A stretch of DNA of 29,375 nucleotides from Octopus sinensis (Eukaryota): positions 1 through 29,375 of the forward strand of contig NW_021832953.1 of NCBI RefSeq assembly GCF_006345805.1. Reading direction: 5' to 3'. The notes beneath the pieces are model-generated. The model saw only the letters and a list, made by a program, of their open reading frames with translations. It searched no databases and was not told the origin of the DNA. The translations under genes were made by a program, and so were the position numbers. Of this stretch, positions 261-29,375 are shown piece by piece (the first letter of the stretch is position 1; the number at the start of each line of letters is the position of its first letter).

Positions 261-525
261 GTCTGCTTTTAATGGAGAATCATGATTATGAAAGTCTCTG
301 CTTTCGGACCAGACATTCCTATACATACATGCATGCGTATATATATATATATACATATTATACATGCATATATACACACACACAAACATACATACTTATA
401 GCCTTATTTCTATACATACATTCCTAAATATGTGTGGTATATATATATAAACACATGTATATATACTGTATATAAATATACACACACACACAAAGAGAGA
501 GTGTTGATGAATGTTACAACAATAA

Positions 526-582
526 GTGTTAGTGTGTAGAATGCAATGTATGCGATGCAGGTTCGATTCCCGGGCGAAGCCA
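526..582 (+). pseudogene. Degenerate tRNA-derived remnant (tRNA-Gly-like pseudogene or SINE head) with a (CAA)n/(GAA)n tail
   Basis: Intact B-box/T-arm GGTTCGATTCCCGGGCG at 560-576. A-box-like GTTAGTGTGTAGAATGC upstream. Anticodon arm not reconstructable. Followed by simple repeats. Confidence 0.35.
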
Positions 583-644
583 TTTACAACAACAACAACA
601 ACAATAAGAAGAAGAAGATTGAAGTTTAATATTTCTGGAAATAT

Positions 645-2342
645 TTATTTGTCAAAATAAAAGAAAGCAAAAGATTGACGTCCAGGAATAATTCCAAAAA
701 CCATCAAAGAATTGTCTGAAACATCCAAACCAAGAACTTCAGAGACTTCATTATCATCCCCTCTGAGGAGTAAATATTTTGGATTATATTTTAATCCCCG
801 GATTTCATCATCTTCAGATGTTTCCTCTTCAATATGTCCAGGTATTTCGTAAATATTGTTTCTTGTATCTGTTATATAAACATATTCACCAATTATGGTC
901 AGACGAGGTCTTGCAATATAATATTCCGGACCATAAAACCTTCCTTTTTCTATTCTTATCCTCCTCACCAAAGACTTTTCCCTGAACCATTCCACAAAAC
1001 ACAAAACTTCCCACCATCCAGACCACTCCTTCTTCTTCATCTCCCTCCTCAAAACAACAACATCACCAAAAGATGTGACTCCCACACCATCCAACACCCC
1101 TTCTTCTCCCTCCATCCTTCCCCATCTCCTCATCTCCCCACGACACACTTCATCTTTACATTTCCCATCTTTGATATCAACCACATCCACATAATAAGGG
1201 TCAAAGATGTCAAGGTCTTTGCAAAAAAGTATAATCCTTGTTGTTCTTCCATATTCTTTGGTATTTCTTGTGTCTCTCTTCTTGAGTTATGTCTCTAATA
1301 TAATGACCACCACACACGAGTTGATTGTCGTGTATTTATAAATCCTGTTGTAGTATTTCTCAGTTCTGATGGTTTTTAAACGACGGAGATCCCTGTTGAA
1401 GACCCTCATTTCTCTCCAAAGGCGACAATGAAACATTCCTCTGTCCACCGACATATGTCCAGTGGTGGTCGTTGTTGTTGTTCATGTTGAAGTATGTCCA
1501 CTGTTGTTGTTGTTGTTCTGATTAATGTGACACTTTCTCGAAACATCAACACACTCACATTCTCATCTAACTTTATTAGTTTACTGTTCCGGTCCCTAAT
1601 GTCCATCAAATCATAATCAACAGGTTCCTCGAATGCAGGAATGGAAAAAGGGACCATTGCTGTCCTATATGGAAGTCTCCTCACTGATATTCATCAATTC
1701 CTGAATTATTAATCTCCGCTATGTAATTACCACATCTCACCTTTAATCTACCTTTACCAATTATTTCACCTGATTTACCTCTTCTTCTTCCTCCTCCATC
1801 TCCATCTCCTCCTCTGTATTCCAATTTATTAATTAATTCATTACTGAATATTTCCTTGTTCGTTTCAGATGTAATGGAAGGGAAACGAAGACCAGAATCA
1901 AGATTTAATGACGACACAGATTCCAGAATGTTCACTTGGTCCCCATCAATCTTTATGCAATGACATTCAATCAATTCACTATGTACACACCAGTAAATAC
2001 CTGCCACTTTTCTCCCTATTACACATAAGGGCCATGGGAGAACTCGACAAACTTGAGATGTCTTCAAATCTTCTCCATTCAGTTGAAATATTTCTCTCCT
2101 TTTAGGAACTGTGACCATTATGTGTGATTCTTGTGTAAAACACACACCACCAACTAAACTTGCAACATTTCTGTGACATAGCAACTGGCCATCTTCATCG
2201 ATATTTTTAATATTTCCATATTGGCTTTTTCACACACAACTGTCTTTCCTTCCTCAGAGACATCAAAATCTTTTACTTGGACAGGACATTCGTCTGTTTG
2301 TAAACGAGCAACCGGGAAGCTGTCTCGATTCACCATAAACAA
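645..2342 (-). CDS. Fragmented C-terminal segment (propellers 5-6) of the same protein
   Basis: Motifs VKDFDVSEEGKTVVCE, GVCFTQESHIMVTVPKRREIFQL, DICRWTEECFIVAF, LDGVGVTSFGDVVVL and RLTIIGEYVYITDTRNNIY. Roughly 6 frame changes. Confidence 0.75.
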
Positions 2343-5300
2343 CCCTTCACATACATATCAATTCATCTCTCTCCATTGGGGCTTCCAACAAACCTTGGTC
2401 CTTTACAGTCTATACTGGAGAATTCTACTTCATCTTTATAAATTCTTTTATTTAAAAATATTCTCTTGTATTCCCCATTCTGGGTCAAACACAAAATGTT
2501 TCGATATTCAGATGGACCTAAATATTTCTCCCACTCACCATAAATGTACAAAAAACTGTCATCAATTGTCATCCTGTCATCACTACCAAAATAATCCTCC
2601 ATGTAGTGTCTGACTGAATGTAAATATTGACCACCACTGTTGAAGAAAATGATGAATCTCAAGTTTAAGACAATGATGACATCTTCATCAGTAACTTTAA
2701 TATCCCGGATTATATCAGAACAATTTCCATCTTCGTCTCTTCTTATTAATGGTTCAGGTATGTCTATTTTATTTATTTCCTTCACACTCGAATGTATTTC
2801 ATCAATATCAACAAAATGCAAATGTCTTCCATCTCTCTTTTCACTCAAAACCAGTTGATTATTTGATAAAGAAGCCACACAATAATATTTATTTCTCGTT
2901 TGGTAAATTACCATCGACAATGGAAATTCCACTTTTAATGTCCACAGTTGGGGTTTATTAGAAAGATCCCAGTTCGTAATGACCAGTGTGTTTGACTGCC
3001 ATCGACACATTTTAATATTATAATAAACATTCACTTTGATTGAATCCAAAAGCTGACCATCCAATGTGAATATCTTAATGTTTCCATTCTCCTCGTCCCA
3101 TCCTGCAATCAGATTATTTTCAGTAAGAACCAAACGATTAATCTCCGCTGGTCCTTTGTCTCCCAAATGTTTAGGGAGAGGAATATGCCTGGCTTTATCA
3201 GAAACTGTCAGGTCCTGTAGATATAAAGTGGAAGACAACATTTCACTGAGAGAAATGTGTCTGGAAAATACATCCACCAGGTCGATATAATAATTAAGTT
3301 GATTATTAGTAACGAGATCATTAACCAACAAATTCTGATCGTTTATGGCAAACATACGGCTTCTGTCTATCAGAAAAACAGACGTTTGGTCAATAGATCC
3401 ACCTTGGAGACTGAGGGGACGTTTCACTTGGGACATTAAAACACTGGGGACCATCTGACAAACGCCATGACCACCACACCTATTCTAGTGTGTACTGAAA
3501 AGCTTTTCCCCTAGTAACAATTAATAGCTTTTCTGTTTCCTTGTCTACTGATAATGATTTCACAAACACAGGGATATTAATTGTCTTAATTACTTCAACT
3601 TGATTATAATATTGATGGCTAAAATGTCTAAATGTGATGGTTTATCACAATAACAAACAATTTCACATTCACCCATCTTACACACCTGTACATAAGGCTG
3701 CCTTAATTTTACACTTCTCACTGTCTTTGATAGGTTTCGATGACCCTTAATTGTTTCTGTAGGGGTAATGTGACCCCTATATGATTAGAATCCCATCGAC
3801 ATATATCTGTGGCTGTAGACGGCAGAGATAATCTGGACACAATGTCTCCTTCCTCAGAAATGTACAACAAGCAATCATGGTTGATGTCAGACACCACCAA
3901 CTGTCCATTGGACAGATTACATATTTCGCCAATGACAAGTTTTTGGTCATTCTCCTTTTCTTTGAGTCGTAGATTTAGATTTCTGATGTAAGGATTTTTA
4001 ATGGGTAAAAGGCAGCCAGACGACCGGTCTTGATACTTGTAAAGAAGAACCCTGTTGAGTTGAGTGTCCGGGACATAAAGAGTTCCTTGGAAAACAGCAA
4101 TGTGAGGGTGAACAGGGAAAGGCAGTTCCCACTGCCATTTCATTTGTCCATATAGATCGTAACATCTGAGAATAGAGTTTCTCCTGAAGAGGACATAGAA
4201 ATAAACATTATCAGAGTAGATGTGATGAGGGTAGCCATAGAATGGAAGGTATTTTTGAAAAAGTTCTTCACCACATGTGGAATACAATACCATTTTATTT
4301 TCGTTTCCATCTACGACTACAAAATTAATTGGAGTTGCAGCAATGCTGACATTATGATGTCCCAGAGAAATTCTTTCTGCGATGTCAACTTTATCTTCGT
4401 TGATCAATAAGATATGGACCTCGCTTTTGTTTTCAGTGGTGGTCACAGCCAGACACTTATTTGATACAATATGACATATTTTCATGTAACCAGTTTGCAC
4501 CTTTATTAAAGGGCCTTTTCTTAGTTCAGGACAGGTGATATACTGAAATCCTTTCATTTCACAATAAAATACCAGGAATCTGTTTGCGTTTATTCTACAA
4601 CAGAAAGAAGGAAGCTCAAGGAAAACTGAATTATTTTGGTTAATTATTTCCCCGTTATCAGTGAATAATTTAGCTTTCTTGTTTTTGTAAATTATTAATA
4701 TAGAAGATGTAGACATAGGTAGAATATTTGTAATGTTGTAGCAATCCTCAATATAAATATAGCTGTTCAATGTTGGGGTCCATAGCTGGAGGTTATGTGA
4801 CTGCCTGGGCCAAAAGTCTTCATTTGTTCCAATGATATGAAGGACATCAAAATAATCGGTTACAAAAATGTTTTCTCTGCCAACAGAAATATGGCGGCAT
4901 TTCATGCCAATTCCTCTTGTTGTCACAGCACCTGTACCTGATATCCGATAAATAATATGTCCCTGAAGGACATAAAAATGGTTTTGGTACACAGAGATGT
5001 GGCTTGGAATGTCCAGGGAATTGGTATCCACCTCAAATAATTGCTGGCCATCCACATTGTAACAGGTAACCCTGTTAATATTGGAAAAGGATACTAAGAG
5101 TTTATTTTGTGCTCCTACAGCAATATCTGAAGGGGTTTCTTTCGTTATGAATTCGTATTTTATTCTATTCTCTTCCCAGTCAATGACGTATATGGTCTGA
5201 CCAAACATTTCTACACCTATAAGCGTAGAATGTTCCAAATAAGAAACCAAGATTAATCCTAGCTGAATTCTTTTGATTCCCAAACTTAAAGGGTTGATAA

Positions 5301-6157
5301 TAAGAATCATCTTTCGAAATGGGAGGGTGGCCAGGACTGTGTCTTCACTGATTCTGGTAAAATCAGTGACAGAAGATGAGCAACGAACATCGTTTCTGTT
5401 GCCGTCTCTTGTTACACAACATATTGTCATAAAGTGGCGGGAATATGTTACAATTCCCCCTTGTATGACAACAATATTGGATATTGGGTTGCTTAAGTCT
5501 TCACCAGATTCCTCAATCTCTACTTCTCTGGTCACAACTGGCCGAAGAGGACGAAATTTTGTGGTTACTTTTGGTGGTTCAATGGTCTTGTGGTTGTATG
5601 GGTTACAGGTGACATAAATGTCAAAGAGTCTTTGTTGAAACCAATCAAGGTTTAGGTGAACAAAATCATTATTTTGTTTTGCAAATTCCAGAAATCTTGG
5701 CATTTTACGTTTGATATTACGTAAAATTCGAGATCCATTTAAACCCAGAGAGTCCATGTGATTACATTTATCCTTTACATAATCTATAAACGTATTGATG
5801 TGGTCTGTTTTGATTAGTGTTCGGTAACATGTCACAATATGAAGAAAACTTGGTAACATGGACTTTTCCTGTTCTTTAGATTTCTTTGTGTCTTTTCTTT
5901 CCTGTTCTTCTGTTTTCTTTGTGTTTTGTGTGTGTAATATTTGGGTAAGATTTGGTGTAGTTTCCTTATAAATTGCTGTTGTATCACAGACTGTGGCAGG
6001 AATGAGAGCCAACATTTTGTTTTCTTCATTAATCTTCTCCATTTTATGAATATAGAATTATTATCTTTTTCTGTTAAATATATTCTTTTCTGTGGATTTT
6101 GTTCTTCCTTTCGAATACATTTTATCTCTTCAAAATTCACTAATTTTTACGTGAAAG
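645..6157 (-). CDS. Giant terminal exon (~1,840 codons, frameshifted in this sequence) encoding a linker plus six tandem divergent NHL/TRIM-like beta-propellers
   Basis: Co-oriented ORFs 6140-5832, 6042-3718, 3454-2363, 2342-2154, 2184-1681, 1684-1406 and 1190-645 join through short open bridging frames, e.g. VIE+NLSKTVRSVKLRQPYVQVCKM, YNQVEVIKTINIPVFVK, VCEK+SQYGNIKNIDEDGQLL and AFG+REMRVFNRDL. The blade motif recurs six times. Splice acceptor ctttcattttatttcAG at 6159-6158. Stop TAA at 647-645 overlaps AATAAA. Intact gene versus pseudogene is not resolved. Confidence 0.8.
2363..3454 (-). CDS. 363-aa segment of the same protein (end of propeller 3 and propeller 4)
   Basis: Motifs INRLVLTENNLIAGWDEENGNIKIFTLDGQ, KMCRWQSNTLVIT, IRDIKVTDEDVIIVL and RMTIDDSFLYIY. 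Confidence 0.85.
   Translation of the reverse strand: MVPSVLMSQVKRPLSLQGGSIDQTSVFLIDRSRMFAINDQNLLVNDLVTNNQLNYYIDLVDVFSRHISLSEMLSSTLYLQDLTVSDKARHIPLPKHLGDKGPAEINRLVLTENNLIAGWDEENGNIKIFTLDGQLLDSIKVNVYYNIKMCRWQSNTLVITNWDLSNKPQLWTLKVEFPLSMVIYQTRNKYYCVASLSNNQLVLSEKRDGRHLHFVDIDEIHSSVKEINKIDIPEPLIRRDEDGNCSDIIRDIKVTDEDVIIVLNLRFIIFFNSGGQYLHSVRHYMEDYFGSDDRMTIDDSFLYIYGEWEKYLGPSEYRNILCLTQNGEYKRIFLNKRIYKDEVEFSSIDCKGPRFVGSPNGER
3718..6042 (-). CDS. 774-aa uninterrupted segment of the multi-propeller protein (linker, propellers 1-2, start of 3)
   Basis: 2.3-kb stop-free frame. Motifs DFTRISEDTVLATLPFRKMILII, PSDIAVGAQNKLLVSFSNINRVTCYNVDGQ, PHIAVFQGTLYVPDTQLNRVLLY and DICRWDSNHIGVTLPLQKQLRVI are typical of NHL/TolB-like blades. 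Confidence 0.9.
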   Translation of the reverse strand: MEKINEENKMLALIPATVCDTTAIYKETTPNLTQILHTQNTKKTEEQERKDTKKSKEQEKSMLPSFLHIVTCYRTLIKTDHINTFIDYVKDKCNHMDSLGLNGSRILRNIKRKMPRFLEFAKQNNDFVHLNLDWFQQRLFDIYVTCNPYNHKTIEPPKVTTKFRPLRPVVTREVEIEESGEDLSNPISNIVVIQGGIVTYSRHFMTICCVTRDGNRNDVRCSSSVTDFTRISEDTVLATLPFRKMILIINPLSLGIKRIQLGLILVSYLEHSTLIGVEMFGQTIYVIDWEENRIKYEFITKETPSDIAVGAQNKLLVSFSNINRVTCYNVDGQQLFEVDTNSLDIPSHISVYQNHFYVLQGHIIYRISGTGAVTTRGIGMKCRHISVGRENIFVTDYFDVLHIIGTNEDFWPRQSHNLQLWTPTLNSYIYIEDCYNITNILPMSTSSILIIYKNKKAKLFTDNGEIINQNNSVFLELPSFCCRINANRFLVFYCEMKGFQYITCPELRKGPLIKVQTGYMKICHIVSNKCLAVTTTENKSEVHILLINEDKVDIAERISLGHHNVSIAATPINFVVVDGNENKMVLYSTCGEELFQKYLPFYGYPHHIYSDNVYFYVLFRRNSILRCYDLYGQMKWQWELPFPVHPHIAVFQGTLYVPDTQLNRVLLYKYQDRSSGCLLPIKNPYIRNLNLRLKEKENDQKLVIGEICNLSNGQLVVSDINHDCLLYISEEGDIVSRLSLPSTATDICRWDSNHIGVTLPLQKQLRVIETYQRQ

Positions 6158-8119: not shown

Positions 8120-8487
8120 AATCAAAATCAAAATCCAAGTCAATCAACATCAATGGAAATTGTAGTTGTGATACCAGTGCCGGTGGTATGTAAAAGAACC
8201 ATCTGAACGTGACCGTAGCCAGCGCCGCCCGACTGGCCTTCGTGCTGGTAGCACATAAAAAGCACCATCCGATCATGGCCATTGCCAGCATCGCCTGGCC
8301 CCCGTGCCGGTGGCACATAAAAAGCACCCACTACACTCACGGAGTGGTTGGTGTTACGAAGGACATCCAGCTGTAGAAACTTTGCCAGATCAGACTGGGC
8401 CTGGTGCAGCCTTCTGGTTTCCCACACCCCAGTTGAACCGTCCAACCCATGCTAGCATTGAAAGCGGATGGTAAATAATGATGATGA

Positions 8488-8488
<1 letters not shown>
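8120..8488 (+). mobile_element. 5'-truncated RTE LINE 3'-UTR copy with (GAT)n tail
   Basis: (CAAAAT)n, then GGTGGCACATAAAAAGCACC subrepeats, then ccaacccatgctagc...gatgatgat. Collinear with the reverse complement of 28652-29100. Confidence 0.85.
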
Positions 8489-9362: not shown

Positions 9363-9700
9363 GTTAGTATCATCATCATCATCGTTTAACGTCTGCCTTC
9401 CATGCTAGCATGGGTTGGACGATTTTGACTGAGGGCTGGCAAACCAGATGGCTGCTTCAGGCTCCAATGTTTATCTGGCAGAGTTTCTACAGCTGGATGC
9501 CCTTCCTAACGCCAACCACTCCGAGACTGTAGTGGGTGCATTTTACATGCCAGTCAGGCAGTACTGGCAACGACCTCGCTCGAATGGTGTCTTTTACGTT
9601 CCACTGACACGGAAGCCAGTTAACCACTCTGGCAACGATCACGCTTGGATGGTGCTCTTAGCACCCTACTAGCCCAGGCACAAGTGCCAGTAAGGCGACG
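9287..9700. mobile_element. Two RTE 3' ends tail-to-tail: short + tail (9287-9337) and longer - copy (~9369-9700)
   Basis: cgtccaacccatactagcatggaaaacggacgctaaacgatgatgat, then catcatcatcgtttaacgtctgccttccatgctagcatgggttggacg. Confidence 0.8.
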
Positions 9701-9714
9701 TGTATATATATATA

Positions 9715-10060
9715 TTCTTTTATTCTTGTACTTGCTTCAGTCATTTGAGTGTGGCCATGCTGGAGCACTGCCTTTAGTCAAACAAATCAACCTCAGGACT
9801 TATTCTTTCTAAGACCAATACTTATTCTATTGGTCTCTTTAGCCAAATTGCTAAGTTACAGGGATGTAAACATACCAATATTGGTTGTCAAGCTCTGTTG
9901 GGGGAGAAGCAGAGACACATAAATATATCTGATGGGCTTCTTTCAGTTTCCGTCTAACAGATCCACTCACAAGGTTTTGATTTGCCCAATGTGCCATGCA
10001 ATGGGACTGAACCCAGAGCCATGTGGTTGGCAAGCATGCTTCTTACCACACAACCACTCT
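9715..10060 (-). mobile_element. tRNA-derived SINE (family 1), near full length
   Basis: On the minus strand: head AGTGGTTGTGTGGTAAGAAGC...GGGTTCAGTCCC (A/B boxes), a microsatellite spacer, and tail gtgctccagcatggcc...actgaagcaagtacaagaataaaag. Homologous to 14160-14490. Confidence 0.85.
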
Positions 10061-10191
10061 TGTGCCCTTGCCCCCACTGCTTCTAATTCTTGTCACCTCC
10101 CACCCCACATTACCATTCCCCCTATACGTTGTCTCTCATAATATATATATATATGTTATGTATGTATATATATGTATATATATATATATAA

Positions 10192-10247
<56 letters not shown>

Positions 10248-10255
10248 CATACATA

Positions 10256-10633
10256 TCTCTCTCTATATAAACGGCAGTTTGTCTGTGTGTGTTTCTGTGT
10301 GTCTGTTAGGTTGTACCCTCACCCTGACCACGGCTTTCAACCTATTCTGATGAAACTTGACACACACATAGCCCAATGTCATAATTCAAAACTAACGCAG
10401 CGAAAATTTTGAAAAGTTCCCCCAGTTCTGAAAAAAATCGATAAATTCGACATGGGGTCGTCGAGAATCAGAAACACAAACCACAGACTGTCTAGGGGAC
10501 GCAACTCCACCTTTTTAACTCTCAAAAATAAATTTACCAAAATTTTTTTCCATTATTTTGCTATATAACTCTCTAAAAATGCTTTATAGTTATTTCCCTT
10601 ACAAACCCGAGCAACGCCGGGCGATACTGCTAG
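10256..10633 (+). mobile_element. Non-autonomous Helitron
   Basis: 5' a|TCTCTCTCTATATAAAC. Subterminal hairpin cccg-agcaacgc-cggg (10606-10621). 3' CTAG|t. Inserted between A and T with no TSD. Confidence 0.85.
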
Positions 10634-10690
10634 TATATATATATATATATATATATATTATGTATGTATATATATATATATATGTATATA

Positions 10691-11572
10691 TTGTATTCCT
10701 TTATTTGTTTCAGTCAATTGACTGCAGCCATGCTGGAGCACCGCCTGTAGTCAAATATAAATGGACCCCAGTTCTTATTCTTTGTTTTGCCCAATACTTA
10801 TTCTATCAGTCTCTTTTGCCAAATCGCAAAGATACAGGGACGCAAACCCACCAAAATCGGTTGTCAAGCAAAGCTGGGGGACAAACATAAACACGAACAT
10901 ATACACACACACATATATATATATAATCGAAATTGAACCAAATTCGATGACTGGCACCCGTGCCAGTGGAGCGCTAACAGCACCATCCGAGTGTGATCAT
11001 TGCCAGAGCAGCTGTCTGGCTCCCATGCTGGTGGCACATGAAAAGCACCATTTGAGCGTGATCGTTACCAGCATTGCCTCATCGGCACTTGTGCTGGTGA
11101 CACAAAAAATGATTCGAGCGAGGTTGTTGCCAGTGCCACTGGACTGGCTCCTGTACAGGTGGCACGTAAAAGGCACCATTTGAGAGTGGATGTGGCCAGT
11201 ATCGCCTGGATGGCCCTTGTGCCAGTGTAACGTAAAAGCAGCCAGTACACTCTCGGAATGGTTGGCATTAGGAAGGGTATCCAGCTATAGAAACTCTGCC
11301 AGATGATGAGATTGGAGCCTGTGCAACCATCTGGTTCGCCAGTCCTCACTCAAATTGTCCAACCCATGACAGCATGGAAAGCGGACGTTAAAAACATGAT
11401 GATGATGATGATGATATCGGGCTTCTTTCATTTCCATCTACCAAATCCTCTCACAAGTCTTTGGTTGACCTGAGGCTATAATAGTAAACACTTGCTCAAA
11501 GCATCACGCAGTGGAACTGAACCCGGAACTATGTGGTTGGGAAGTAAGCTTCTTACCACACAGCCACTCCTG
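10691..11572 (-). mobile_element. SINE family 1 copy split by an RTE 3' fragment (tail 10691-~10900, head ~11417-11572)
   Basis: Tail and tRNA-like head flank the insertion in the correct order and orientation. Confidence 0.75.
10926..11415 (+). mobile_element. 5'-truncated RTE 3'-UTR copy with (GAT)n tail, nested in the SINE
   Basis: Starts cgaaattgaacc (as at 27700). GGTGGCACGTAAAAGGCACC subrepeats. Ends ggaaagcggacgttaaaaacatgatgatgat. Confidence 0.85.
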
Positions 11573-17009: not shown

Positions 17010-17420
17010 ATTTATTCTTTTACTTGTTTCAGCAATGGGACTGTGGTCATGCTGGAGCAATGCCTTAAGGGCTTTAGCCAAACAAATCGACTCCAGGGCT
17101 TACTCTTTGAAAGCTTAGTACATATTCTGGCAGTCTTTTTTACCGAATGAAATTACAGGGATGTAAACACACCACCATCAGTTGTCAAGTTATGATGAGG
17201 GTGGGAGGGAGGCTGACACACAGACAGGCACACACATGCACATGATCTATATATATATATATATTTATGTCTGATGGGCTCACTTCAGTTTCCATCTGAC
17301 AGGTCCACTTACAAGGCCCGAGGTCAAAATAGAAGAGAATTGCCCTAGGTGCCATGCAGTAGGACTGAACACAGAACCCTGTGGCTGAAAGCAAACTTCT
17401 TACCACACAGGAACACCTGT
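17010..17420 (-). mobile_element. SINE family 1 preceding module A
   Basis: Tail ttacttgtttcagcaatgggactgtggtcatgctggagca and head ggtgccatgcagtaggactgaacacag. Confidence 0.75.
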
Positions 17421-17499
17421 GCTTATACATTTGTGGAGCACACAACATGTTATATATATATATATATATATAATATATAATATATATATATATAACACA

Positions 17500-17626
17500 C
17501 ATATAATGTGTTTATTATGGTAGTTTGACTTTAATATTCCCTCGTAGTGTGAAGCATTTTATGTCTGGTAATGCCCTGATATATAAACATATATATATTA
17601 AATATATGTTGTATAGTTAGAATGAT

Positions 17627-17817: not shown

Positions 17818-18640
17818 CCATTCGTATGCTCCCAGTCATCTCCCAAATACATTCGTAAACTATGACAAGATATACTCTGACATGCGGTTCCATTCCTTCT
17901 CTCTGCCGATTATATTCGTAGTCTCGTTATGTTGATTTGGGGGCATCAGTCTCACAGATTTTATTTTAGAAATCCACCCCATACGTATTCAGTTAGTCTC
18001 TTGTACTGAAGCACAAACCAAATCTAGACATATATTTTGGGAAGGGACCCTTGTGAAAAAATATGCAATGCATTCATATAACTGTTGTTTCTAGCAAACT
18101 TTGTATTTAAGTTTGTGTCTGTAACTAGTTTTTTTGTTGTATTAATTACATTTTAATAATTAAATGCAAATTAATGCCTAATTAAAAATATAATTAAAAG
18201 TATGACATATAAAATGCAACTGAATGCAAGAGCTGCTAGTAATAGCAGCCAAATTTACAGAGAAAACAGCCCCATATTGTCTCACGTAACTCCATACATA
18301 GTTATATAGCTAGAGTTGCTTGAAATAGCAGCCAAATGCCCCTCCAATCCACTGTACTTCTGAAATTAGCTACAGTTTAAAATTCTACGCCTGTTTGTCA
18401 TGCAAAACAAATCCAATACAACAGGTCCATTAAACTGTATCATTTCATATGCTAGAAACAACAGCAAGTGTTTAGCAAAAATATATACAAAGACGGACAA
18501 AGAAAAACTGGGAGGAAAGCAAAAACCAAAAAGATCGAAATATATAATGTATCAATGTTAAATGTACTTGCTAGAATAGCAGCCAAAAGAAATTGAATCA
18601 CAGCTGTCTATCTATCTATTTGTCTGTCTGTCTGTTTGTC
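17818..18640. repeat. Triplicated module, copy A
   Basis: Collinear with 19240-20165 and 21470-22325 (shared ttccattccttc.tctgccga, ggcaccagtctcacagattttatttcag, ggtccattaaactg, atgctagaaacaacagcaag). Confidence 0.85.
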
Positions 18641-18652
18641 TCTCTATTTATA

Positions 18653-18699
<47 letters not shown>

Positions 18700-18717
18700 T
18701 ATATATATATATATATA

Positions 18718-18995
18718 CATTCTTTTATTCTGTACTTTATTTATTCTTTTATTTGTTTCAGTTATTTCACTGTGGCCCTGCTGGAGCACCACCTTACTGG
18801 GTTTCTGTCAAACAAATCTTGTAAGTTTAGTACTTATTCTATCAGTCTCTTTTGTCAAATCAAAGTCACAGGGACATAAACAGACCAACATCGGTTGTCA
18901 TACGATGGGATGTGTGGTGTAGGGTAGACACATACAAATGAATATGTATATATATATAGATATGAATATGTATGTATATGTATATATATATATAC

Positions 18996-20664: not shown

Positions 20665-20880
20665 CTATTGTACTATAGGCACGAGGCCTGAAAGTTTGGC
20701 GGGGGGGGGGTGTCGAGTTGATAACATTAACTCCAATGTTTCACTGGTACTTCATTTATTGACCCTGAAAGGTTGAAAGGCAAAGTTGACCCTTACGAAA
20801 TTTGAACTCAGAATATAGTGACAGGTGAAAAACCGCTAAGTACTTTGTCCGGTGCACTATCAATTCTGCCAGCTCACCTC
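20665..20880 (-). mobile_element. tRNA-derived SINE (family 2)
   Basis: Minus-strand head gagctggcagaattg...ctgagttcaaatt and core ctttgcctttcaacctttcagggtcaataaatgaagtacc. Related copy at 22645-22850. Confidence 0.7.
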
Positions 20881-20894
20881 TCTCTGTGGTGTGT

Positions 20895-20895
20895 G

Positions 20896-20950
<55 letters not shown>

Positions 20951-20978
20951 TATATATATATATCTATATAATATATAT

Positions 20979-21031
<53 letters not shown>

Positions 21032-21042
21032 TAATATATATA

Positions 21043-21082
<40 letters not shown>

Positions 21083-21095
21083 TGATATATATATA

Positions 21096-21187
<92 letters not shown>

Positions 21188-21210
21188 ATATATATATTAT
21201 ATATATAGTA
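20895..21210. repeat. Long imperfect (TA)n microsatellite (~315 bp)
   Basis: Direct inspection. Confidence 0.95.
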
Positions 21211-21469
21211 TGTATGTATGGGTATAAATATACGATGGGCTTCGTTTAGTTTCCGCCAACCAAATTCTACCCACAAGGCTTTGGTTGGCCAGATGCTGTA
21301 GTAGAAGACACTTGTCCAAGTTGTCATACAGTGGGACTGAACCCCCGAGTGTGTGGTTGGAAACAAGCTTCTTACCACACAGCCACACCTGTATGTGAAT
21401 GCATGTTGTATAGTTAGATGGAGGGAGATATATAATATATAAGTACAAATGTATATACATAGATATCAA

Positions 21470-22325
21470 TCCATTCGTTTGTTCCCAGTCGTCTTCCCTC
21501 ACACACTCCTAAACGATGCAAAGATATTCTCCTAAATGTGGCTTCCATTCCTTCCTCTGCCGAATACATCCATACTCTTGTTGCTTATGCTGATTTAGGG
21601 GCACCAGTCTCACAGATTTTATTTCAGAAAACCAACCCCCATCCCCTATACATATTCACTCAGTCTCTTCTACTGAAGCACAAACTTTACGTAGACACAC
21701 GTTTTTGGAAAGGAAACTGTGTAAAAAGAAACATGAAATACTTCTATATAGCTGCTGTTTCTAGCATATGTAATTGTGTGTTTGTAACTAGTTTTGGTTG
21801 TTGTATTAATTTCACTGTAATACTTAAATGCAAATTAAAGTTTAATTTAATGAGAAAATTAGATTAATCATGTGTAAAATGCAAACGAATGCCAGAGCTG
21901 CTAGATATAGCAGCCAAATCTACGTTGAAACAACATCATACCGTCTCTTCTAACTCCATACATATTTATATATTAGCTGATGAAAGCTGAAGTGTACATG
22001 ATAGCTAGAGTTGTTTGAAATAGCAGCTAAATGCCCCTCCAATCTACTGTTCTTCTGAAATTAATTGCAGTTTATAAATTGTACACCTATTTGTCACACG
22101 ACACAAATCCAATACAACAGGTCCATGAAACTGAGACATTTCATATGCTAGAAACAACAGCAAGAGTTTAGCAAAAATATATGCAAAGACGGACACAGAA
22201 AACGAGAGAAGGATGCAGAAAAAATAAGATCTAAATATATAACGTATCAATGCTTAATGTACAGTAGACCTGCTGCAAGAAATAACAGCCAAATCTCACA
22301 GCCATCCATCTATCCATTTGTCTGT
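21470..22325. repeat. Triplicated module, copy C
   Basis: Same collinear anchors as copies A and B. Confidence 0.85.
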
Positions 22326-24950: not shown

Positions 24951-25074
24951 TAAATCAGTGCTTCTCAAAGGGGTGGCCTATGGGACTGTCAGACAAGTTG
25001 TTTTGAGACAATTTGGTTTAAATGTTTGACAACTCAGCACCATCCATTGGACAGGGAGTGGGGCATTTTGCTCG

Positions 25075-25324
25075 TATATACATGTGTGTGTGTGTGTATA
25101 AATATATATATATGTGTGTGTGTGTATATATATATATGTGTGTGTGTGTATACATATATATGTGTGTATGTGTGTGTGTGTGTGTATACATATATATGTG
25201 TGTATGTGTGTATATATATATGTGTGTGTGTGTGTATACATATATATATGTGTGTGTGTGTGTATATATATGTGTGTGTGTGTGTGTATGCCTGTGTATG
25301 TGTGTGTGTGTATACATATATATA

Positions 25325-25397
<73 letters not shown>

Positions 25398-25488
25398 TCA
25401 TATATATATATTCCTGCATATATATACATGTGTATATATATATGCATATATATCTATTCATACATATATATGCATATATATACATGTA

Positions 25489-25530
<42 letters not shown>
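25075..25530. repeat. Compound (TG)n/(TA)n microsatellite
   Basis: Direct inspection. Abuts the RTE 5' truncation point. Confidence 0.95.
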
Positions 25531-25533
<3 letters not shown>

Positions 25534-27537
25534 AAGGCCTGGAAGAACGGTGGTAGCAGGGAAGGGTATCAGACTGCCAGAAGGGAAGCTAGGAGACAGG
25601 TCTATCTAGCCAGAGGGGAAGCAGATAAGAGAAAATTTGCCAATGTCCTGCGCCGTGAGGATGAAAGACTTGAGGTATTTCGTGTTGCAAGACAGTGTGG
25701 GAGAGAGAATCGTGATGTGGTAGGAGAGAAATGTGTTCGCATGGAGGATGGTTCACTTGCGCTAAATGAGGATGCAAAGAGAGAGCTTGGAGACGCCACT
25801 ATGAAAGTTACTGAATGAGGAAAATGAATGGGATAAAGAGAGTCTGCCGAATGTTGACCCTACAGAGGGACCAGCTATCCGAGTTGATAGTTCCGTGGTA
25901 GCTAAGGCAATTAGAAGCATGAAGACAGGGAAAGCCCCAGGCCCATCAGGAATTACTGCAGAGATGCTCAAAATATCTGGCAGTGTCGGCTATAACCTAG
26001 TCACCCGTATAGTCAACCAGGTGATACACGAAGGAGTCATACCCAATGACTGGTGCAGCAGCATACTAGTCAACTGCTACAAAGGTAAAGGTGATGCCCT
26101 AGATACAATAATTACAGAGGTATCAAGCTGTTGGATCAGGTAATGAAGGTTACGGAGAGGGTCATAGCCCAACTAATTAGAGAGAGAGTTAGTTTAGATG
26201 AGATGCAGTTTGGGTTCGTGCCAGGAAAAAGTACCACTGATGCTATATTCCTGGTAAGGCAGCTGCAGGAGAAATACCTAGCCAAAGATAAGCCCCTGTA
26301 CCTGGCTTTCGTTGACATGGAGAAAGCTTTTGATAGGGTCCCCCGATCCCTTATCTGGTGGTCAATGAGGAAACTAGGGATAGATGAATGGCTGGTGAGG
26401 ACTGTGCAAGCCATGTACAGAGATGCCGTAAGTAAGGTTAGGGTTGGCAACATGTACACAGAAGAATTCAAAGTAGAGGTTGGGGTCCACCAGGGTTCAG
26501 TACTCAGCCCCCTCCTATTTATCATAGTACTCCAGGCAATTACGGAGGAATTCAAGACAGGCTGTCCCTGGGAGCTCCTCTACGCTGACGACCTTGCTCT
26601 TATTGCTGAGTCACTATCAGAACTGGAGGAGAAGTTCCAGGTGTGGAAGGAGGGTTTAGAATCAAGGGGCCTTAGAATCAACCTAGCTAAAACCAAAGTA
26701 CTAATAAGTAGAAAGGTAGACAATCCACAAATATCTTCAGGAAGATGGCCTGCTCGATCTGTAGAAAAGGTGTGTAGGTAGAAACTCTATAGATGTACCC
26801 AGTGTAAGCTATGGACACATAAGAGGTGCAGCAATGTCAAAGGTACGCTAACTGGGAAGATAGTTTTTGTATGTGGCAGATGCTCGGGAGCATTAACCTC
26901 CGAAAATCTGCAGAAAACAACTTCCGTCACTTTCCAGGGGGAAAAACTAGAAGTAGTTGATAGCTTCCGTTATCTAGGTGACCAAGTCAGTAGTGGGGGT
27001 GGGTGCGCTGAAAGTGTAACTGCTAGAATAAGAATAGCCTGGGCAAAGTTTAGGGAGCTCTTACCTCTGCTGGTGACTAAAGGCCTCTCGCTCAGAGTAA
27101 AAGGCAGACTGTATGATGCGTGTGTACGAACAGCCATGCTACATGGCAGCGAAACATGGGCTGTGACTTCTGAGGACATGCGTAAGCTCGTGAGGAATGA
27201 AGCCAGTATGCTCCGATGGATGTGTAATGTCAGTGTACATACTCGACAGAGCGTTAGCACCTTGAGAGAAATGTTGTACCTAAGAAGCATCAGTTGTGGT
27301 GTGCAAGAGAGACGATTGCGCTGGTATGGTCATGTGGCGAGAATGGATGAAGATAGGTGTGTGAGAAAGTGCCAATCCCTAGCAGTTGAGGGAACCCGTG
27401 GAAGAGGTAGACCCAGGAAAACCTGGGACGAGGTGGTGAAGCACGACCTTCGAACTTTAGGCCTCACTGAGGAAATGACCAGAGACCGAGACCTTTGGAA
27501 ATATTCTGTACGTGAGAAGACCAGGCAGGACAAGTGA
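25531..27537 (+). CDS. LINE ORF2 remnant: reverse transcriptase with internal PHD finger (frameshifted)
   Basis: [98 protein letters not shown]. About 6 small frameshifts. Confidence 0.92.
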
Positions 27538-27629: not shown

Positions 27630-28245
27630 ACCCATCCCAACCCCCCATGCTTGCGAAGACATGTTGGGGCAAGCGAAATCGAAATCGAAATTGAAACCGA
27701 ATTGAACCAGCCAGGATCCCTGGCCTGGTGGTACGTAAAAAGCACTATCCGACTCGGGGCCGTGGCACGTAAAATACTCCAATGCGACCGTACGACAGGC
27801 ACCCATGCCAACCCCCTTTGCTTGTGAAGACATGTTGGGGCAAGCGAAATCGAAATCGAAATCGAATTGAACCAGCCAGGATCCCTGGTCTGGTGGTACG
27901 TAAAAAGCACTATCCGACTCGTGGCCGTGGCACGTAAAATACTCCAATGCGACCGTACGACAGGCACCCTTGCCAACCCCCTTTGCTTGTGAAGACATGT
28001 TGGGGCAGCGAAATCGAAATCGAATTGAACCAGCCAGGATCCCTGGTCTGGTGGTACGTAAAAAGCACTATCCGACTCGTGGCCGTGGCACGTAAAATAC
28101 TCCAATGCGACCGTACGACAGGCACCCTTGCCAACCCCCTTTGCTTGTGAAGACATGTTGGGGCAAGCGAAATCGAAATCGAATTGAACCAGCCAGGATC
28201 CCTGGTCTGGTGGTACGTAAAAAGCACTATCCGACTCGTGGCCGA
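27630..28245 (+). repeat. Tandem array of ~3.7 units (171/165/158 bp spacing) in the RTE 3' UTR
   Basis: Anchor gaagacatgttgggg at 27655, 27826, 27991 and 28149. Confidence 0.95.
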
Positions 28246-28651
28246 TGCCAGCACCGCCTTGACTGGCTTCCGTGCGGTGGCACATAAAATACACCAATCT
28301 GACCGTGGCCGTTGCCAGCCCCGCCTGGCACCTGTGCAGGTGGCACGTAAAAAGCACCCACTACACTCACGGAGTGGTTGGCGTTAGGAAGGGCATCCAG
28401 CTGTAGAAACATTGCCAAATTAGACTGGAGCCTGGTGCAGCCTTCTGGCTTCCCAGAACCCCGGTCGAACCGTCCAACCCATGCTAGCATGGAGAACGGA
28501 CGTTAAACGACGATGATGATGATGATGATGATATTCATACGTATGCTCACACACACATATATATATTCATAAATATATGTATGTATATATATATATATGT
28601 ATGTATGTATATATTCATACATTTACTCACACACACACACACCCACACACA

Positions 28652-29375
28652 TATCATCATCATCATCATCATCATCATTTAGCATTCGCTTTCCATGCTA
28701 GCATGTGTTGGATGGTTCAACTGGGGTCTGGGAAGCCAGAAGGCTGCACCAGGCCCAGTCTGATCTGGCAGTGTTTCTATGGCTGGATGCCCTTCCTAAC
28801 GCCAACCACTCCGTGAGTATAGTGGGTGCTTTTTATGTGCCACCCGCACAGGTGCCAGACGGAGCTGGCAAACGTCCACGGATGGATGGTGCTTTTTACG
28901 TGCCACCGGCACGGGGGCCAGGTGAGGCTGGCAACGGCCACGAACGGATGGTGCTTTTTACGTGCCACCAGCATGGAGGCCAGTCGGGGTGGCGCTGGCA
29001 ACGGCCACGATCGGATGGTTCGCTTACTTGTCACCGGCACTGGTATCACAGCTGCAATTTCCATTGATGTTGATCGACTTTGATTTTGGTTCTGCTTTCT
29101 GATATCTGATTTGATTTGGTTTGATTTTGAATTTGATTTTTTGATTTTTTGATTTTTGATTTTCAATTGCCTCAACGGGTCTTCACAAGTGGAGTTCTGT
29201 GTCCCAAGAAGGAAAGGTATGTATAAGTCGACTGGCTACATACCAGGTAGAGGCCACGGGTTATGGTCTCACTAGTCTTGCTGGGTCTTCTCATGCACAG
29301 CATACTTCCATAGGTCTATGTCTCTAGTCATTTCCTTGGTGAGACCTAAAGTGCTTCACCACCTCATCCCAGGTT
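28652..29375 (-). mobile_element. Second RTE LINE 3' end (related subfamily), running off the window
   Basis: Minus strand encodes a degenerate ORF2 end (TWDEVVKH...KEMTRDIDLWKYAVHEKTQQD*), then a single cttgtgaagacccgttgaggcaa, (CAAAAT)n, subrepeats and a (GAT)n tail. Confidence 0.9.

What the first reader, a model, noticed from the sequence alone, without database searches (positions are those of the whole stretch)
645..5400. Six tandem divergent NHL-type beta-propellers encoded by one ~5.5-kb exon
Seen: one blade signature (D/K/G-h-C-x-h ... hh-V-T-hP-x-x-K/R-x-h-x-hh, followed by a second C/H-containing blade) recurs at ~5365 (DFTRISEDTVLATLP), ~4605 (FCCRINANRFLVFY), ~3808 (DICRWDSNHIGVTLP), ~3014 (KMCRWQSNTLVITN), ~2150 (GVCFTQESHIMVTVP) and ~1460 (DICRWTEECFIVAF). 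Spacing is 690-865 bp, or about 230-290 aa, roughly one 6-bladed propeller each. Known: TRIM-NHL proteins, including the expanded mollusc TRIM-like families, usually carry a single C-terminal propeller. Inference: a six-propeller array of about 1,600 aa without introns, with units too diverged to align at DNA level, may be a lineage-specific multivalent receptor or scaffold (immune, RNA-binding or sensory). Automated annotation would split it into 6 or more small genes.
Basis: partly seen in the sequence, partly recalled or inferred. Interest (0 to 1): 0.82.

Follow-up and report, generated by a model that had tools for sequence, protein, structure and literature searches.

The report
Octopod six-propeller NHL-like giant gene
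The region holds one frame-broken copy of an undescribed, octopus-only family of intronless ~5.4-kb genes encoding ~1,800-aa intracellular proteins made of six tandem NHL-like beta-propeller units, two of which diversify rapidly between copies, as binding surfaces of recognition proteins often do.

Summary
The six motif strings sit on the minus strand within 1-2 bp of the stated positions. They mark strands A-B of blade 2 in six homologous ~210-320-aa units. Unit profiles align in register (hhalign 84-96% probability; unit 5 is weak).

Window 6042-645 (-) is colinear, without introns, with intact octopod paralogues. Seven family members checked are single uninterrupted exons. AlphaFold2 gives all-beta blocks (pLDDT 70-90) separated by disordered linkers, and Foldseek finds multi-propeller proteins. 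A generic-unit profile hits the NHL domains of TRIM2, TRIM3, Brat, TRIM71, Thin and Mei-P26 (E 1.7e-10 to 2e-3). Pfam NHL stays below threshold.

Caveats: units 1, 2, 4 and 6 have about 6 blades, unit 3 about 5 and unit 5 about 4. No RING or B-box is present. The window copy has 12 frame-shifting indels, all after codon 767. Their spectrum looks more like long-read consensus error or very recent damage than old decay.

New here: the family is found only in Octopoda, with dozens of copies on one small chromosome. Single-copy members are under purifying selection (dN/dS 0.39-0.45). Clustered copies show dN/dS above 1 in units 4 and 6 only, and they are recombinant mosaics.

Function is inferred, not shown.

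The parts
645..6042 (-). Whole coding unit of one family copy. ATG at 6042, stop at 645-647. Colinear with intact 1,798-aa paralogue P0058, but broken by 12 frame-shifting indels.
   Evidence: ORF chain; tblastn colinearity with P0002, P0023, P0027 and P0001; alignment to the intact single-exon L009 at 96.5% DNA identity; start MEKINEE... and end ...FAFFYFDK are conserved in paralogues.
5545..6042 (-). N-terminal region (~165 aa): disordered Lys/Glu-rich start followed by about five predicted helices. Hypervariable and swapped between paralogues. Not related to the repeat units.
   Evidence: AF2 helices 46-145 with low pLDDT; no hhalign match to any unit; mean entropy 1.07 among cluster paralogues; alternative N-termini in P0005 and L010.
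4795..5544 (-). Unit 1: NHL-like beta-propeller, about 23-24 strands (6 blades). Intact in the window.
   Evidence: AF2 pLDDT 80-90 for residues 171-405; motif at 5320-5364; dN/dS 0.14-0.57.
4015..4794 (-). Unit 2: NHL-like beta-propeller, about 22-24 strands (6 blades). Intact in the window.
   Evidence: AF2 residues 424-669; motif at 4564-4605; hhalign to U1, U3 and U4.
3925..4014 (-). Disordered linker between units 2 and 3.
   Evidence: AF2 pLDDT below 50 for residues 672-703.
3164..3924 (-). Unit 3: about 5 blades, plus a Gly/Ser-rich length-variable spacer and a conserved ~45-aa low-confidence segment. In the window it carries four 1-bp deletions (3738, 3611, 3491, 3477).
   Evidence: AF2 on the intact paralogue, residues 105-313; motif at 3763-3807; lesions; linker expansion DGSISS in L001 and P0002.
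2298..3163 (-). Unit 4: about 6 blades. Hypervariable between paralogues (dN/dS 1.4-3.6). In the window it has one 1-bp deletion near 2349.
   Evidence: AF2 residues 354-636 of the paralogue; motif at 2972-3013; dN/dS; entropy patches; lesion.
1622..2297 (-). Unit 5: short unit of about 4 blades, interrupted by a disordered Gly/Arg-rich insert. The most conserved unit between paralogues. In the window: -1 at 2219, a compensating +4 at 2037 and -1 at 2024, and -1 at 1691.
   Evidence: AF2 residues 660-780 and 837-869; motif at 2104-2148; entropy 0.12; lesions.
648..1621 (-). Unit 6: about 6 blades with an inserted helix. Hypervariable (dN/dS 1.1-6.6). In the window: -1 at 1417, -1 at 1331, +1 at 1230.
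   Evidence: AF2 residues 891-1199; motif at 1418-1459; hhalign U4-U6 95.5%; dN/dS and entropy; lesions.

Best explanation
Window 645-6042 (minus strand) is one copy of an undescribed gene family found only in octopods. An intact member is a single intronless ORF of 5.0-5.7 kb. It encodes a ~1,660-1,925-aa protein with no signal peptide and no membrane segment. The protein has a variable helical N-terminal region followed by six tandem, mutually homologous, NHL-like beta-propeller units joined by short disordered linkers.

Shown: the architecture, the single exon, the octopod restriction, purifying selection on single-copy members, and excess amino-acid change confined to units 4 and 6 in the clustered young copies.

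Inferred: the protein works as an intracellular multivalent binding platform. Units 1-3 and 5 would provide constant contacts or a frame. The loops of propellers 4 and 6, and the N-terminal region, would carry diversified recognition surfaces for RNA or protein ligands, as NHL propellers do in TRIM-NHL proteins. The cluster evolves by tandem duplication, recombination and diversifying selection.

The copy in this window carries 12 frame-shifting indels in its 3' 57%. Whether it is really disabled or mis-assembled is unresolved. The lesion spectrum leans towards consensus error or very recent damage.
For: Colinearity and no introns.

Six homologous units.

All-beta blocks of four-stranded 36-45-aa blades at pLDDT 70-90. 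Multi-propeller structural matches (IFT-A, UTP21, DDB1, LRP2/LRP4) at probability 1.0.

NHL class: whole-family profiles hit TRIM71, TRIM2, TRIM3, Brat and Thin at 8e-5 to 3e-3. The generic-unit profile hits TRIM2 1.7e-10, TRIM3 1.5e-9, Brat 2.5e-7, TRIM71 7e-7, Thin 1.5e-6 and Mei-P26 2e-3. Pfam NHL is hit in 4 of 30 units, best 2e-4, and DUF5128 '6-bladed beta-propeller' at 5e-4. A bivalve RING + B-box protein aligns to blades 1-2 of unit 3 at 31% identity, including the motif.

Restriction to Octopoda.

Functional genes: O. vulgaris / O. bimaculoides orthologue pairs are intact, with dN/dS 0.39 and 0.45, and have no TM or signal peptide.

Diversification: unit 4 dN/dS 1.4-3.6 and unit 6 1.1-6.6 in all 10 pairs of five copies, against 0.14-0.7 for units 1 and 5. 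Pooled dN>dS gives P 0.007-0.05 in four of the five pairs tested. Variability falls in patches that lie mostly between predicted strands.

Mosaicism: L010 has dS 0.7-0.9 in the N-terminus + unit 1 but ~0.04 in units 2-6.
Against: No Pfam family reaches its gathering threshold.

The strongest PDB score is to a repetitive WD40 protein, reached by summing a single-blade match 13 times. The NHL E-values are also sums of weak per-blade matches.

Blade counts come from DSSP strings only. I had no coordinates, so ring closure and the number of separate propellers (especially for units 3 and 5) are not verified. Mean pLDDT is only 65-68.

There is no transcript, protein or ligand evidence.

dN/dS above 1 between recombining paralogues can be inflated by gene conversion from diverged donors. 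The P values are modest and the pairs are not independent.

The window copy as assembled cannot make the full protein.
Confidence: 0.72

Rival explanations
1. The window copy is a genuine pseudogene: a dead tandem duplicate decaying by small deletions. The family may be real, but this locus is junk.
For: There are 12 frame-shifting indels relative to the intact L009. The syntenic O. vulgaris locus L001 is broken too (11 frame-shifters, split into three gene calls), whereas L009 (0) and L002 (1) in that same assembly are clean, so errors there are not uniform. Overall dN/dS among copies is 0.85-1.06. Many fragmentary gene models lie in the cluster.
Against: No substitution-type stop codon occurs in ~1,740 codons, where ~5.6 are expected (P 0.0035). 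One-base deletions outnumber one-base insertions 18 to 1 across the two loci (P 0.01 against a 70:30 expectation), and they mostly sit in 2-4-nt homopolymers. No lesion is clearly shared between the window and L001. The window also shows three times more 1-bp gaps than L001 in non-coding flanks, at the same density as in the gene. Window-versus-L001 substitutions carry selection signatures (unit 1: 8 synonymous / 5 nonsynonymous; unit 4: 4 / 42), so the divergence was not neutral. The O. vulgaris assembly is ONT-based (PMC10700109).
Confidence: 0.4
2. The units are propellers of another class (WD40-like or YWTD-like), or a new class. The NHL resemblance would then be convergence of a common 'xGxhhVxD..N..hhhh..xG' blade pattern.
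For: The top PDB score is to WD40 protein 2ymu and its designed derivatives (1.5e-19). Foldseek's best hits are WD40 tandem propellers and YWTD arrays. Pfam NHL is sub-threshold.
Against: The WD40 hit is a single ~35-aa blade match repeated 8-13 times, each with independent E around 100. Six different natural TRIM-NHL propellers are hit and no other natural WD40 comes close. Units are ~250 aa with about 6 blades of ~40 aa, not 7 blades over 300 aa or more. There are no EGF modules and no signal peptide, as a YWTD array would need. Foldseek on whole multi-domain models favours whichever target spans several propellers, so it cannot rank classes.
Confidence: 0.15
3. The ORFs are several separate small genes, or exons separated by short introns at the frame changes.
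For: Automated annotation of the syntenic locus calls three genes. The window's ORFs lie in different frames.
Against: Intact paralogues read straight through every junction as one exon. The junctions differ from intact copies by single bases, not by intron-like inserts.
Confidence: 0.02
4. The multi-copy intronless ORF belongs to a mobile element or virus-derived sequence rather than a host gene family.
For: It is intronless, multi-copy and clustered, and the flanks are rich in repeats, including a reverse-transcriptase fragment at 26131-26781.
Against: No transposase, RT, integrase or capsid domain lies in or next to the ORF. Single-copy members are kept at syntenic chromosomes in three Octopus species under purifying selection. 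Copies share flanking DNA, as segmental duplicates do.
Confidence: 0.03

Closest known systems
TRIM-NHL proteins (TRIM2, TRIM3, TRIM71/LIN-41, Brat, Mei-P26, Thin): C-terminal six-bladed NHL propeller
   Same: Blade sequence pattern and length; about six four-stranded blades per ~250-aa unit; intracellular; profile similarity to six solved NHL domains; a helical region precedes the propellers.
   Different: Six propeller units instead of one. No RING, B-box or filamin domain. Pfam NHL stays below threshold. Encoded by one intronless exon. Found only in octopods.
Expanded mollusc TRIM-like RING + B-box + propeller proteins (example: Potamilus streckersoni KAK3588083.1, P0050)
   Same: It also belongs to a lineage-expanded family.
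   Different: It has a single (partial) propeller behind a RING and B-box. The match is marginal (E 9e-4 in the exhaustive search), so common origin is a lead, not a result.
LRP/megalin YWTD propeller arrays
   Same: Several six-bladed propellers strung along one polypeptide. Among the best Foldseek matches to the 1,200-aa model.
   Different: Those are extracellular, separated by EGF modules, carry the YWTD blade motif, and have many introns. Here there is no signal peptide, TM segment or EGF.
Multi-propeller WD40 scaffolds (DDB1/CPSF160 with three; EML5/6 with six, from my own knowledge)
   Same: Several propellers in one intracellular chain acting as a binding platform. Foldseek matches at probability 1.0.
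   Different: Those are seven-bladed WD40-type propellers, in ancient, conserved, single-copy genes. Here the units are about six-bladed and NHL-like, and the genes are young, clustered and diversifying.

Membership tests
NHL repeat propeller (Pfam PF01436; fold of the TRIM-NHL C-terminal domain) | Sequence match to the NHL repeat model at or above Pfam's gathering score | tested here: not met
   No NHL hit on the window pieces or on whole paralogues. When scanned unit by unit, 4 of 30 units hit PF01436, best E 2e-4, below threshold.
NHL repeat propeller (Pfam PF01436; fold of the TRIM-NHL C-terminal domain) | Profile-level similarity to solved NHL domains | tested here: met
   Generic-unit profile: TRIM2 1.7e-10, TRIM3 1.5e-9, Brat 2.5e-7, TRIM71 7e-7, Thin 1.5e-6, Mei-P26 2e-3. 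Whole-family profiles: 8e-5 to 3e-3. These scores are sums of weak per-blade matches.
NHL repeat propeller (Pfam PF01436; fold of the TRIM-NHL C-terminal domain) | Six four-stranded blades of ~40-45 aa closing into one ring | tested here: inconclusive
   Strand counts from AF2 DSSP: units 1, 2, 4 and 6 have about 22-24 strands, unit 3 about 20, unit 5 about 16; blades are 36-45 aa. No coordinates were available, so ring closure was not checked.
TRIM-NHL protein family | N-terminal RING, B-box and coiled-coil (tripartite motif) ahead of the propeller | tested here: not met
   No RING or B-box is found by Pfam in the window pieces or in full-length paralogues. There is only a low-confidence helical region. 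It should not be filed as a TRIM.
WD40 propeller | WD40 repeat signature and typically seven blades | tested here: not met
   No WD40 Pfam hit at threshold; only isolated weak hits to WDR90, CFAP43 and ELP1 propellers. The 2ymu score is one blade match summed 13 times. Units have about six blades.
YWTD / LDL-receptor class B propeller array | Secreted or membrane protein with YWTD blades and flanking EGF modules | tested here: not met
   No Ldl_recept_b or EGF Pfam hits. No signal peptide or TM-grade hydrophobic segment. The resemblance is structural only.
Pseudogene (status of the window copy) | Disabling lesions that are real, plus neutral evolution since disablement | tested here: inconclusive
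   12 frame-shifters are present. However, there are no nonsense codons (P 0.0035), the 1-bp indels are deletion-biased 18:1 in homopolymers, the same gap density is seen in the flanks, and dN/dS by unit is non-neutral. Raw reads are needed.

The most novel reading that the evidence does not exclude
Octopods evolved their own intracellular recognition-receptor family. It would be a retrogene-like, intronless six-propeller NHL array whose fourth and sixth propellers and N-terminal module are diversified by positive selection and recombination within a tandem cluster. On this reading it is a variable sensor of foreign or self RNA or protein (innate immunity, transposon or virus control, or RNA regulation in a lineage known for heavy RNA editing).
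Probability: 0.25. Interest if true: 0.85.

Novelty: new variant of a known kind. Interest (0 to 1): 0.62.

Why it matters
NHL propellers are known as single C-terminal RNA- or protein-binding modules. I found no description of six of them in one chain, encoded without introns, multiplied to dozens of copies on one small chromosome and restricted to octopods. Every database entry is 'uncharacterized' or 'hypothetical'.

Selection differs by domain: units 1-3 and 5 are constrained, while units 4 and 6 change faster than silent sites. That is the pattern of families whose job is variable recognition. It gives a concrete, testable handle on a cephalopod-specific innovation.

In practice, the result also shows how such genes are fragmented or lost in annotation, because long-read consensus errors or real lesions break the giant exon.

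Tried and rejected
BLASTP of the window's pieces against each other was too weak to prove a repeat.

Pfam on the pieces and on whole paralogues gave nothing at threshold. The PF23381 tag precomputed for P0010 was not reproduced.

Foldseek on the two whole models confirms multi-propeller folds but cannot rank propeller classes, because long multi-propeller targets win.

A 2-bp deletion that looked shared between the window and L001 when L002 was the reference was not reproduced against the fully intact L009. I therefore dropped it as evidence of inherited disablement.

The 257-bp 'insertion' in L001 was suspected to be a transposon. It is a Ser/Gly tandem expansion of the linker, also present in frame in P0002.

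The overall dN/dS of ~0.9 first read as neutral decay. The per-unit analysis showed it to be a blend of constraint and excess change.

Rfam and tRNA scans of the window found nothing. Literature searches found no description of the family.

I did not read the broken copy through its stops. The window's intact 774-aa piece and intact paralogue ORFs were used instead.

The third word-indexed protein search was not spent on the bivalve lead, because that relative shares no 5-residue words with the units.
Full report
WHAT IS IN THE WINDOW

The window is eukaryotic DNA: AT-rich, full of microsatellites, with a reverse-transcriptase fragment. The minus strand between 6042 and 645 carries a chain of ORFs of 774, 363, 62, 167, 92 and 181 aa that keep changing frame. 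Within this one sequence the recurrence is statistically weak: BLASTP between pieces gives at best E 0.002 over 38 aa.

ONE GENE, ONE EXON

The 774-aa piece finds only uncharacterized proteins of Octopus vulgaris, O. sinensis and O. bimaculoides. The paralogues read continuously through every junction of the window's ORF chain, down to the same C-terminus. tblastn places them colinearly on 6042..648 with abutting segments and no room for introns.

Gene models of eight family members are each exactly 3 x (aa+1) bp long, that is, single exons. They are P0023 3915 bp, P0038 5139, P0039 5025, P0041 5742, P0043 4989, P0052 5043, P0055 5025 and P0058 5397 bp. One model (P0061) adds upstream exon(s) but keeps a 1,889-codon main ORF.

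An exhaustive HMMER scan of 1.8 billion cluster representatives found 22 clusters. All were octopod (Octopus species, Argonauta hians) except one marginal bivalve protein. A family-profile search found 69 proteins, again all octopod, including intact 1,783-1,903-aa copies.

SIX HOMOLOGOUS UNITS

The motif is conserved at all six positions in members only 34-44% identical to the window. I cut the family alignment at the motifs and compared unit profiles with hhalign. The matches are in register:
- U1-U2: 86% probability, 142 columns
- U2-U3: 84%
- U2-U4: 92%
- U3-U6: 93%
- U4-U6: 95.5%, 151 columns, P 1.6e-8
- U5: weak (27% to U2), but still in register

The N-terminal ~200 aa matches nothing. 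MAFFT aligns 30 unit sequences in one register.

FOLD

AlphaFold2 on the window's intact 774-aa piece, using the family alignment, gives four regions:
- a low-confidence helical N-terminus
- residues ~171-405: about 24 strands, pLDDT 80-90
- residues ~424-669: about 22-24 strands
- a disordered linker at 672-703, then the start of a third all-beta domain

Blades are 36-45 aa with four strands each.

For the rest of the protein I used an intact paralogue (L002) as the target. The model shows unit 3 with about 20 strands, unit 4 with about 23, unit 5 with about 16 and a ~55-aa disordered Gly/Arg insert, and unit 6 with about 22 plus one helix. So four units look six-bladed, unit 3 about five-bladed and unit 5 about four-bladed. 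I had no coordinates, so ring closure is unverified.

Foldseek matches both models to tandem or multi-propeller proteins (IFT-A, UTP21, DDB1, LRP4, megalin) at probability 1.0. TM-scores are low, because the relative orientation of the domains differs.

PROPELLER CLASS

Pfam finds nothing at threshold. Whole-family profiles searched against PDB sequences return almost only NHL domains: TRIM71, TRIM2, TRIM3, Brat and Thin, at 8e-5 to 3e-3.

The generic-unit profile gives TRIM2 1.7e-10, TRIM3 1.5e-9, Brat 2.5e-7, TRIM71 7e-7, Thin 1.5e-6 and Mei-P26 2e-3. A repetitive WD40 protein and its designed derivatives score higher, but only by summing one ~35-aa blade match 8-13 times.

When the 30 units are scanned one by one, Pfam NHL is hit in 4 (best E 2e-4) and '6-bladed beta-propeller' DUF5128 in 1.

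The marginal bivalve hit is a RING + B-box protein. Its propeller aligns to blades 1-2 of unit 3 at 31% identity, including the motif.

I therefore call the units NHL-like. The protein is not a TRIM, because no RING or B-box is present.

SELECTION AND FAMILY DYNAMICS

Two single-copy members on large chromosomes are intact in both O. vulgaris and O. bimaculoides, with dN/dS of 0.39 and 0.45. They have no signal peptide or TM segment. These are functional intracellular proteins.

Most other copies sit on one small chromosome: O. vulgaris OX597841.1 (29 Mb), with counterparts on small O. sinensis and O. bimaculoides records. Copies there are 96-97.5% identical at DNA level.

Their overall dN/dS is about 0.9-1.2, but this is a blend. 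In all ten pairs of five copies, unit 4 has dN/dS 1.4-3.6 and unit 6 has 1.1-6.6, while unit 1 has 0.14-0.57 and unit 5 has 0.4-0.7. Pooled dN>dS in units 4+6 gives P 0.007-0.05 in four of the five pairs tested.

Across about 20 cluster proteins, variability is concentrated in the N-terminal region (entropy 1.07), unit 4 (0.67) and unit 6 (0.58). It falls in patches that lie mostly between predicted strands. Units 2, 3 and 5 are nearly invariant.

One copy (L010) joins a very diverged N-terminus + unit 1 (dS 0.7-0.9) to near-identical units 2-6 (dS ~0.04), so the copies are recombinant mosaics. The unit 3-4 linker varies in length through Ser/Gly tandem expansion.

STATUS OF THE WINDOW COPY

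Against the intact L009, the window has 12 frame-shifting indels: ten 1-bp deletions, one +4 and one +1. All lie after codon 767. The +4 at 2037 and the -1 at 2024 compensate each other.

L001 (O. vulgaris) is syntenic with the window over ~15 kb at 95-98% identity. It has 11 frame-shifters at different sites. Its neighbours L009 and L002 in the same assembly have 0 and 1.

For real decay:
- The broken state is seen in two assemblies.
- Lesion density differs greatly between neighbouring copies in one assembly.

For artefact or very recent damage:
- No nonsense codon is present, where 5.6 are expected (P 0.0035).
- One-base deletions outnumber one-base insertions 18 to 1, in short homopolymers.
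- The window shows the same 1-bp gap density in non-coding flanks, three times more than L001.
- Window-versus-L001 substitutions are not neutral: unit 1 has 8 synonymous / 5 nonsynonymous changes, unit 4 has 4 / 42.
- The O. vulgaris assembly is ONT-based (PMC10700109).

I cannot settle this without reads. I put the chance of a real pseudogene at about 0.4.

HOW IT MOST LIKELY WORKS (INFERENCE)

The protein would be an intracellular multi-propeller platform. Conserved propellers 1-3 and 5 would give a constant frame or constant partners. The loops of propellers 4 and 6, and the N-terminal module, would carry diversified recognition surfaces. By analogy with NHL domains, which bind RNA or peptides on one face, the ligands could be RNAs or proteins.

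The cluster's tandem duplication, recombination and domain-restricted excess of amino-acid change resemble the evolution of recognition or immune-type families. None of this is shown experimentally.

COMPARISON AND NOVELTY

The nearest known kinds are the single NHL propellers of TRIM-NHL proteins and the expanded mollusc RING/B-box propeller proteins. By architecture, the closest are multi-propeller scaffolds (DDB1; EML5/6 from my own knowledge) and the extracellular YWTD arrays of LRPs.

The combination here was not found in the searchable literature: six NHL-like units, no TRIM module, one giant exon, octopod-only, clustered and domain-specifically diversifying. All database entries are unnamed. 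I rate it a new variant of a known kind.

LIMITS

- MSAs are shallow (18-23 sequences) and mean pLDDT is 65-68.
- No coordinates were available.
- dN/dS was computed pairwise with Nei-Gojobori counts, on recombining paralogues.
- No expression data were available.
- Absence outside Octopoda rests on annotated proteins only.

Noticed in passing
window 2298-3163 and 648-1621 (units 4 and 6); loci L001, L002, L009, L010: Excess amino-acid change is confined to two units. dN/dS is 1.4-3.6 (unit 4) and 1.1-6.6 (unit 6) in all ten pairs of five cluster copies, against 0.14-0.7 in units 1 and 5. The variable residues form patches that lie mostly between predicted strands.
   Followed up: yes
L010:21544-27211 versus L009:10001-15397: Paralogues are mosaics. 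The N-terminus + unit 1 are highly diverged (dS 0.7-0.9), but units 2-6 are nearly identical (dS ~0.04). This implies recombination or gene conversion inside the cluster. P0005 also carries an alternative N-terminus.
   Followed up: partly
window ~3440-3500; L001:12569-12825: The Gly-rich spacer inside unit 3 (before the conserved segment that leads into unit 4) varies in length. L001 and P0002 carry a ~250-bp DGSISS-type Ser/Gly tandem expansion that is absent from the window and from L009.
   Followed up: yes
window 645-3740 versus 3741-6042: All 12 frame-shifting indels of the window copy lie in the 3' 57% of the gene (P about 0.001 if uniform). L001 likewise has 10 of its 11 after codon 831. 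The reason is unknown; it could be regional polishing failure or recent gene conversion of the 5' part.
   Followed up: partly
O. vulgaris OX597841.1 (29.2 Mb), 9.26-10.44 Mb; O. bimaculoides CM046628.1 (18.6 Mb): Most family copies lie on one small chromosome-scale record in each species. L001, L009, L010 and L002 span at least 1.2 Mb of it. A few conserved single-copy members sit on large chromosomes (OX597815.1, OX597822.1).
   Followed up: partly
window 277-644 (3' flank of the gene): About 365 bp downstream of the stop codon is 90-96% identical in the window, L001, L002, L009 and L010, so the duplicated segments include flanking DNA.
   Followed up: partly
window 26131-26781 (+), with 27073-27537 (+): A reverse-transcriptase (RVT_1, E 6e-30) ORF fragment of a non-LTR-type retroelement, in a GC-richer stretch (46-52% GC against ~36% elsewhere).
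   Followed up: partly
window 8152-8488, 9369-9660, 11126-11418, 28209-28528, 28657-28973: A ~300-bp interspersed repeat occurs at least five times in both orientations in the window and several times in L001 (72-92% identity). ARAGORN found no tRNA gene and there was no Rfam hit anywhere in the window. The element is unclassified.
   Followed up: partly
window 10023-10890, 17185-17502, 18593-18922, 20818-21502, 25018-25818: Long TA/TG/CA-type microsatellite tracts produce spurious 'YIYIYI' / 'CVCVCV' ORFs. These are not genes.
   Followed up: no
P0046 (331 aa) and P0094 (953 aa), found: Some gene models fuse ankyrin repeats (plus a C3HC4 RING in P0046) to a fragment of this family. They could be real chimeras or annotation run-ons. 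This was not examined.
   Followed up: no
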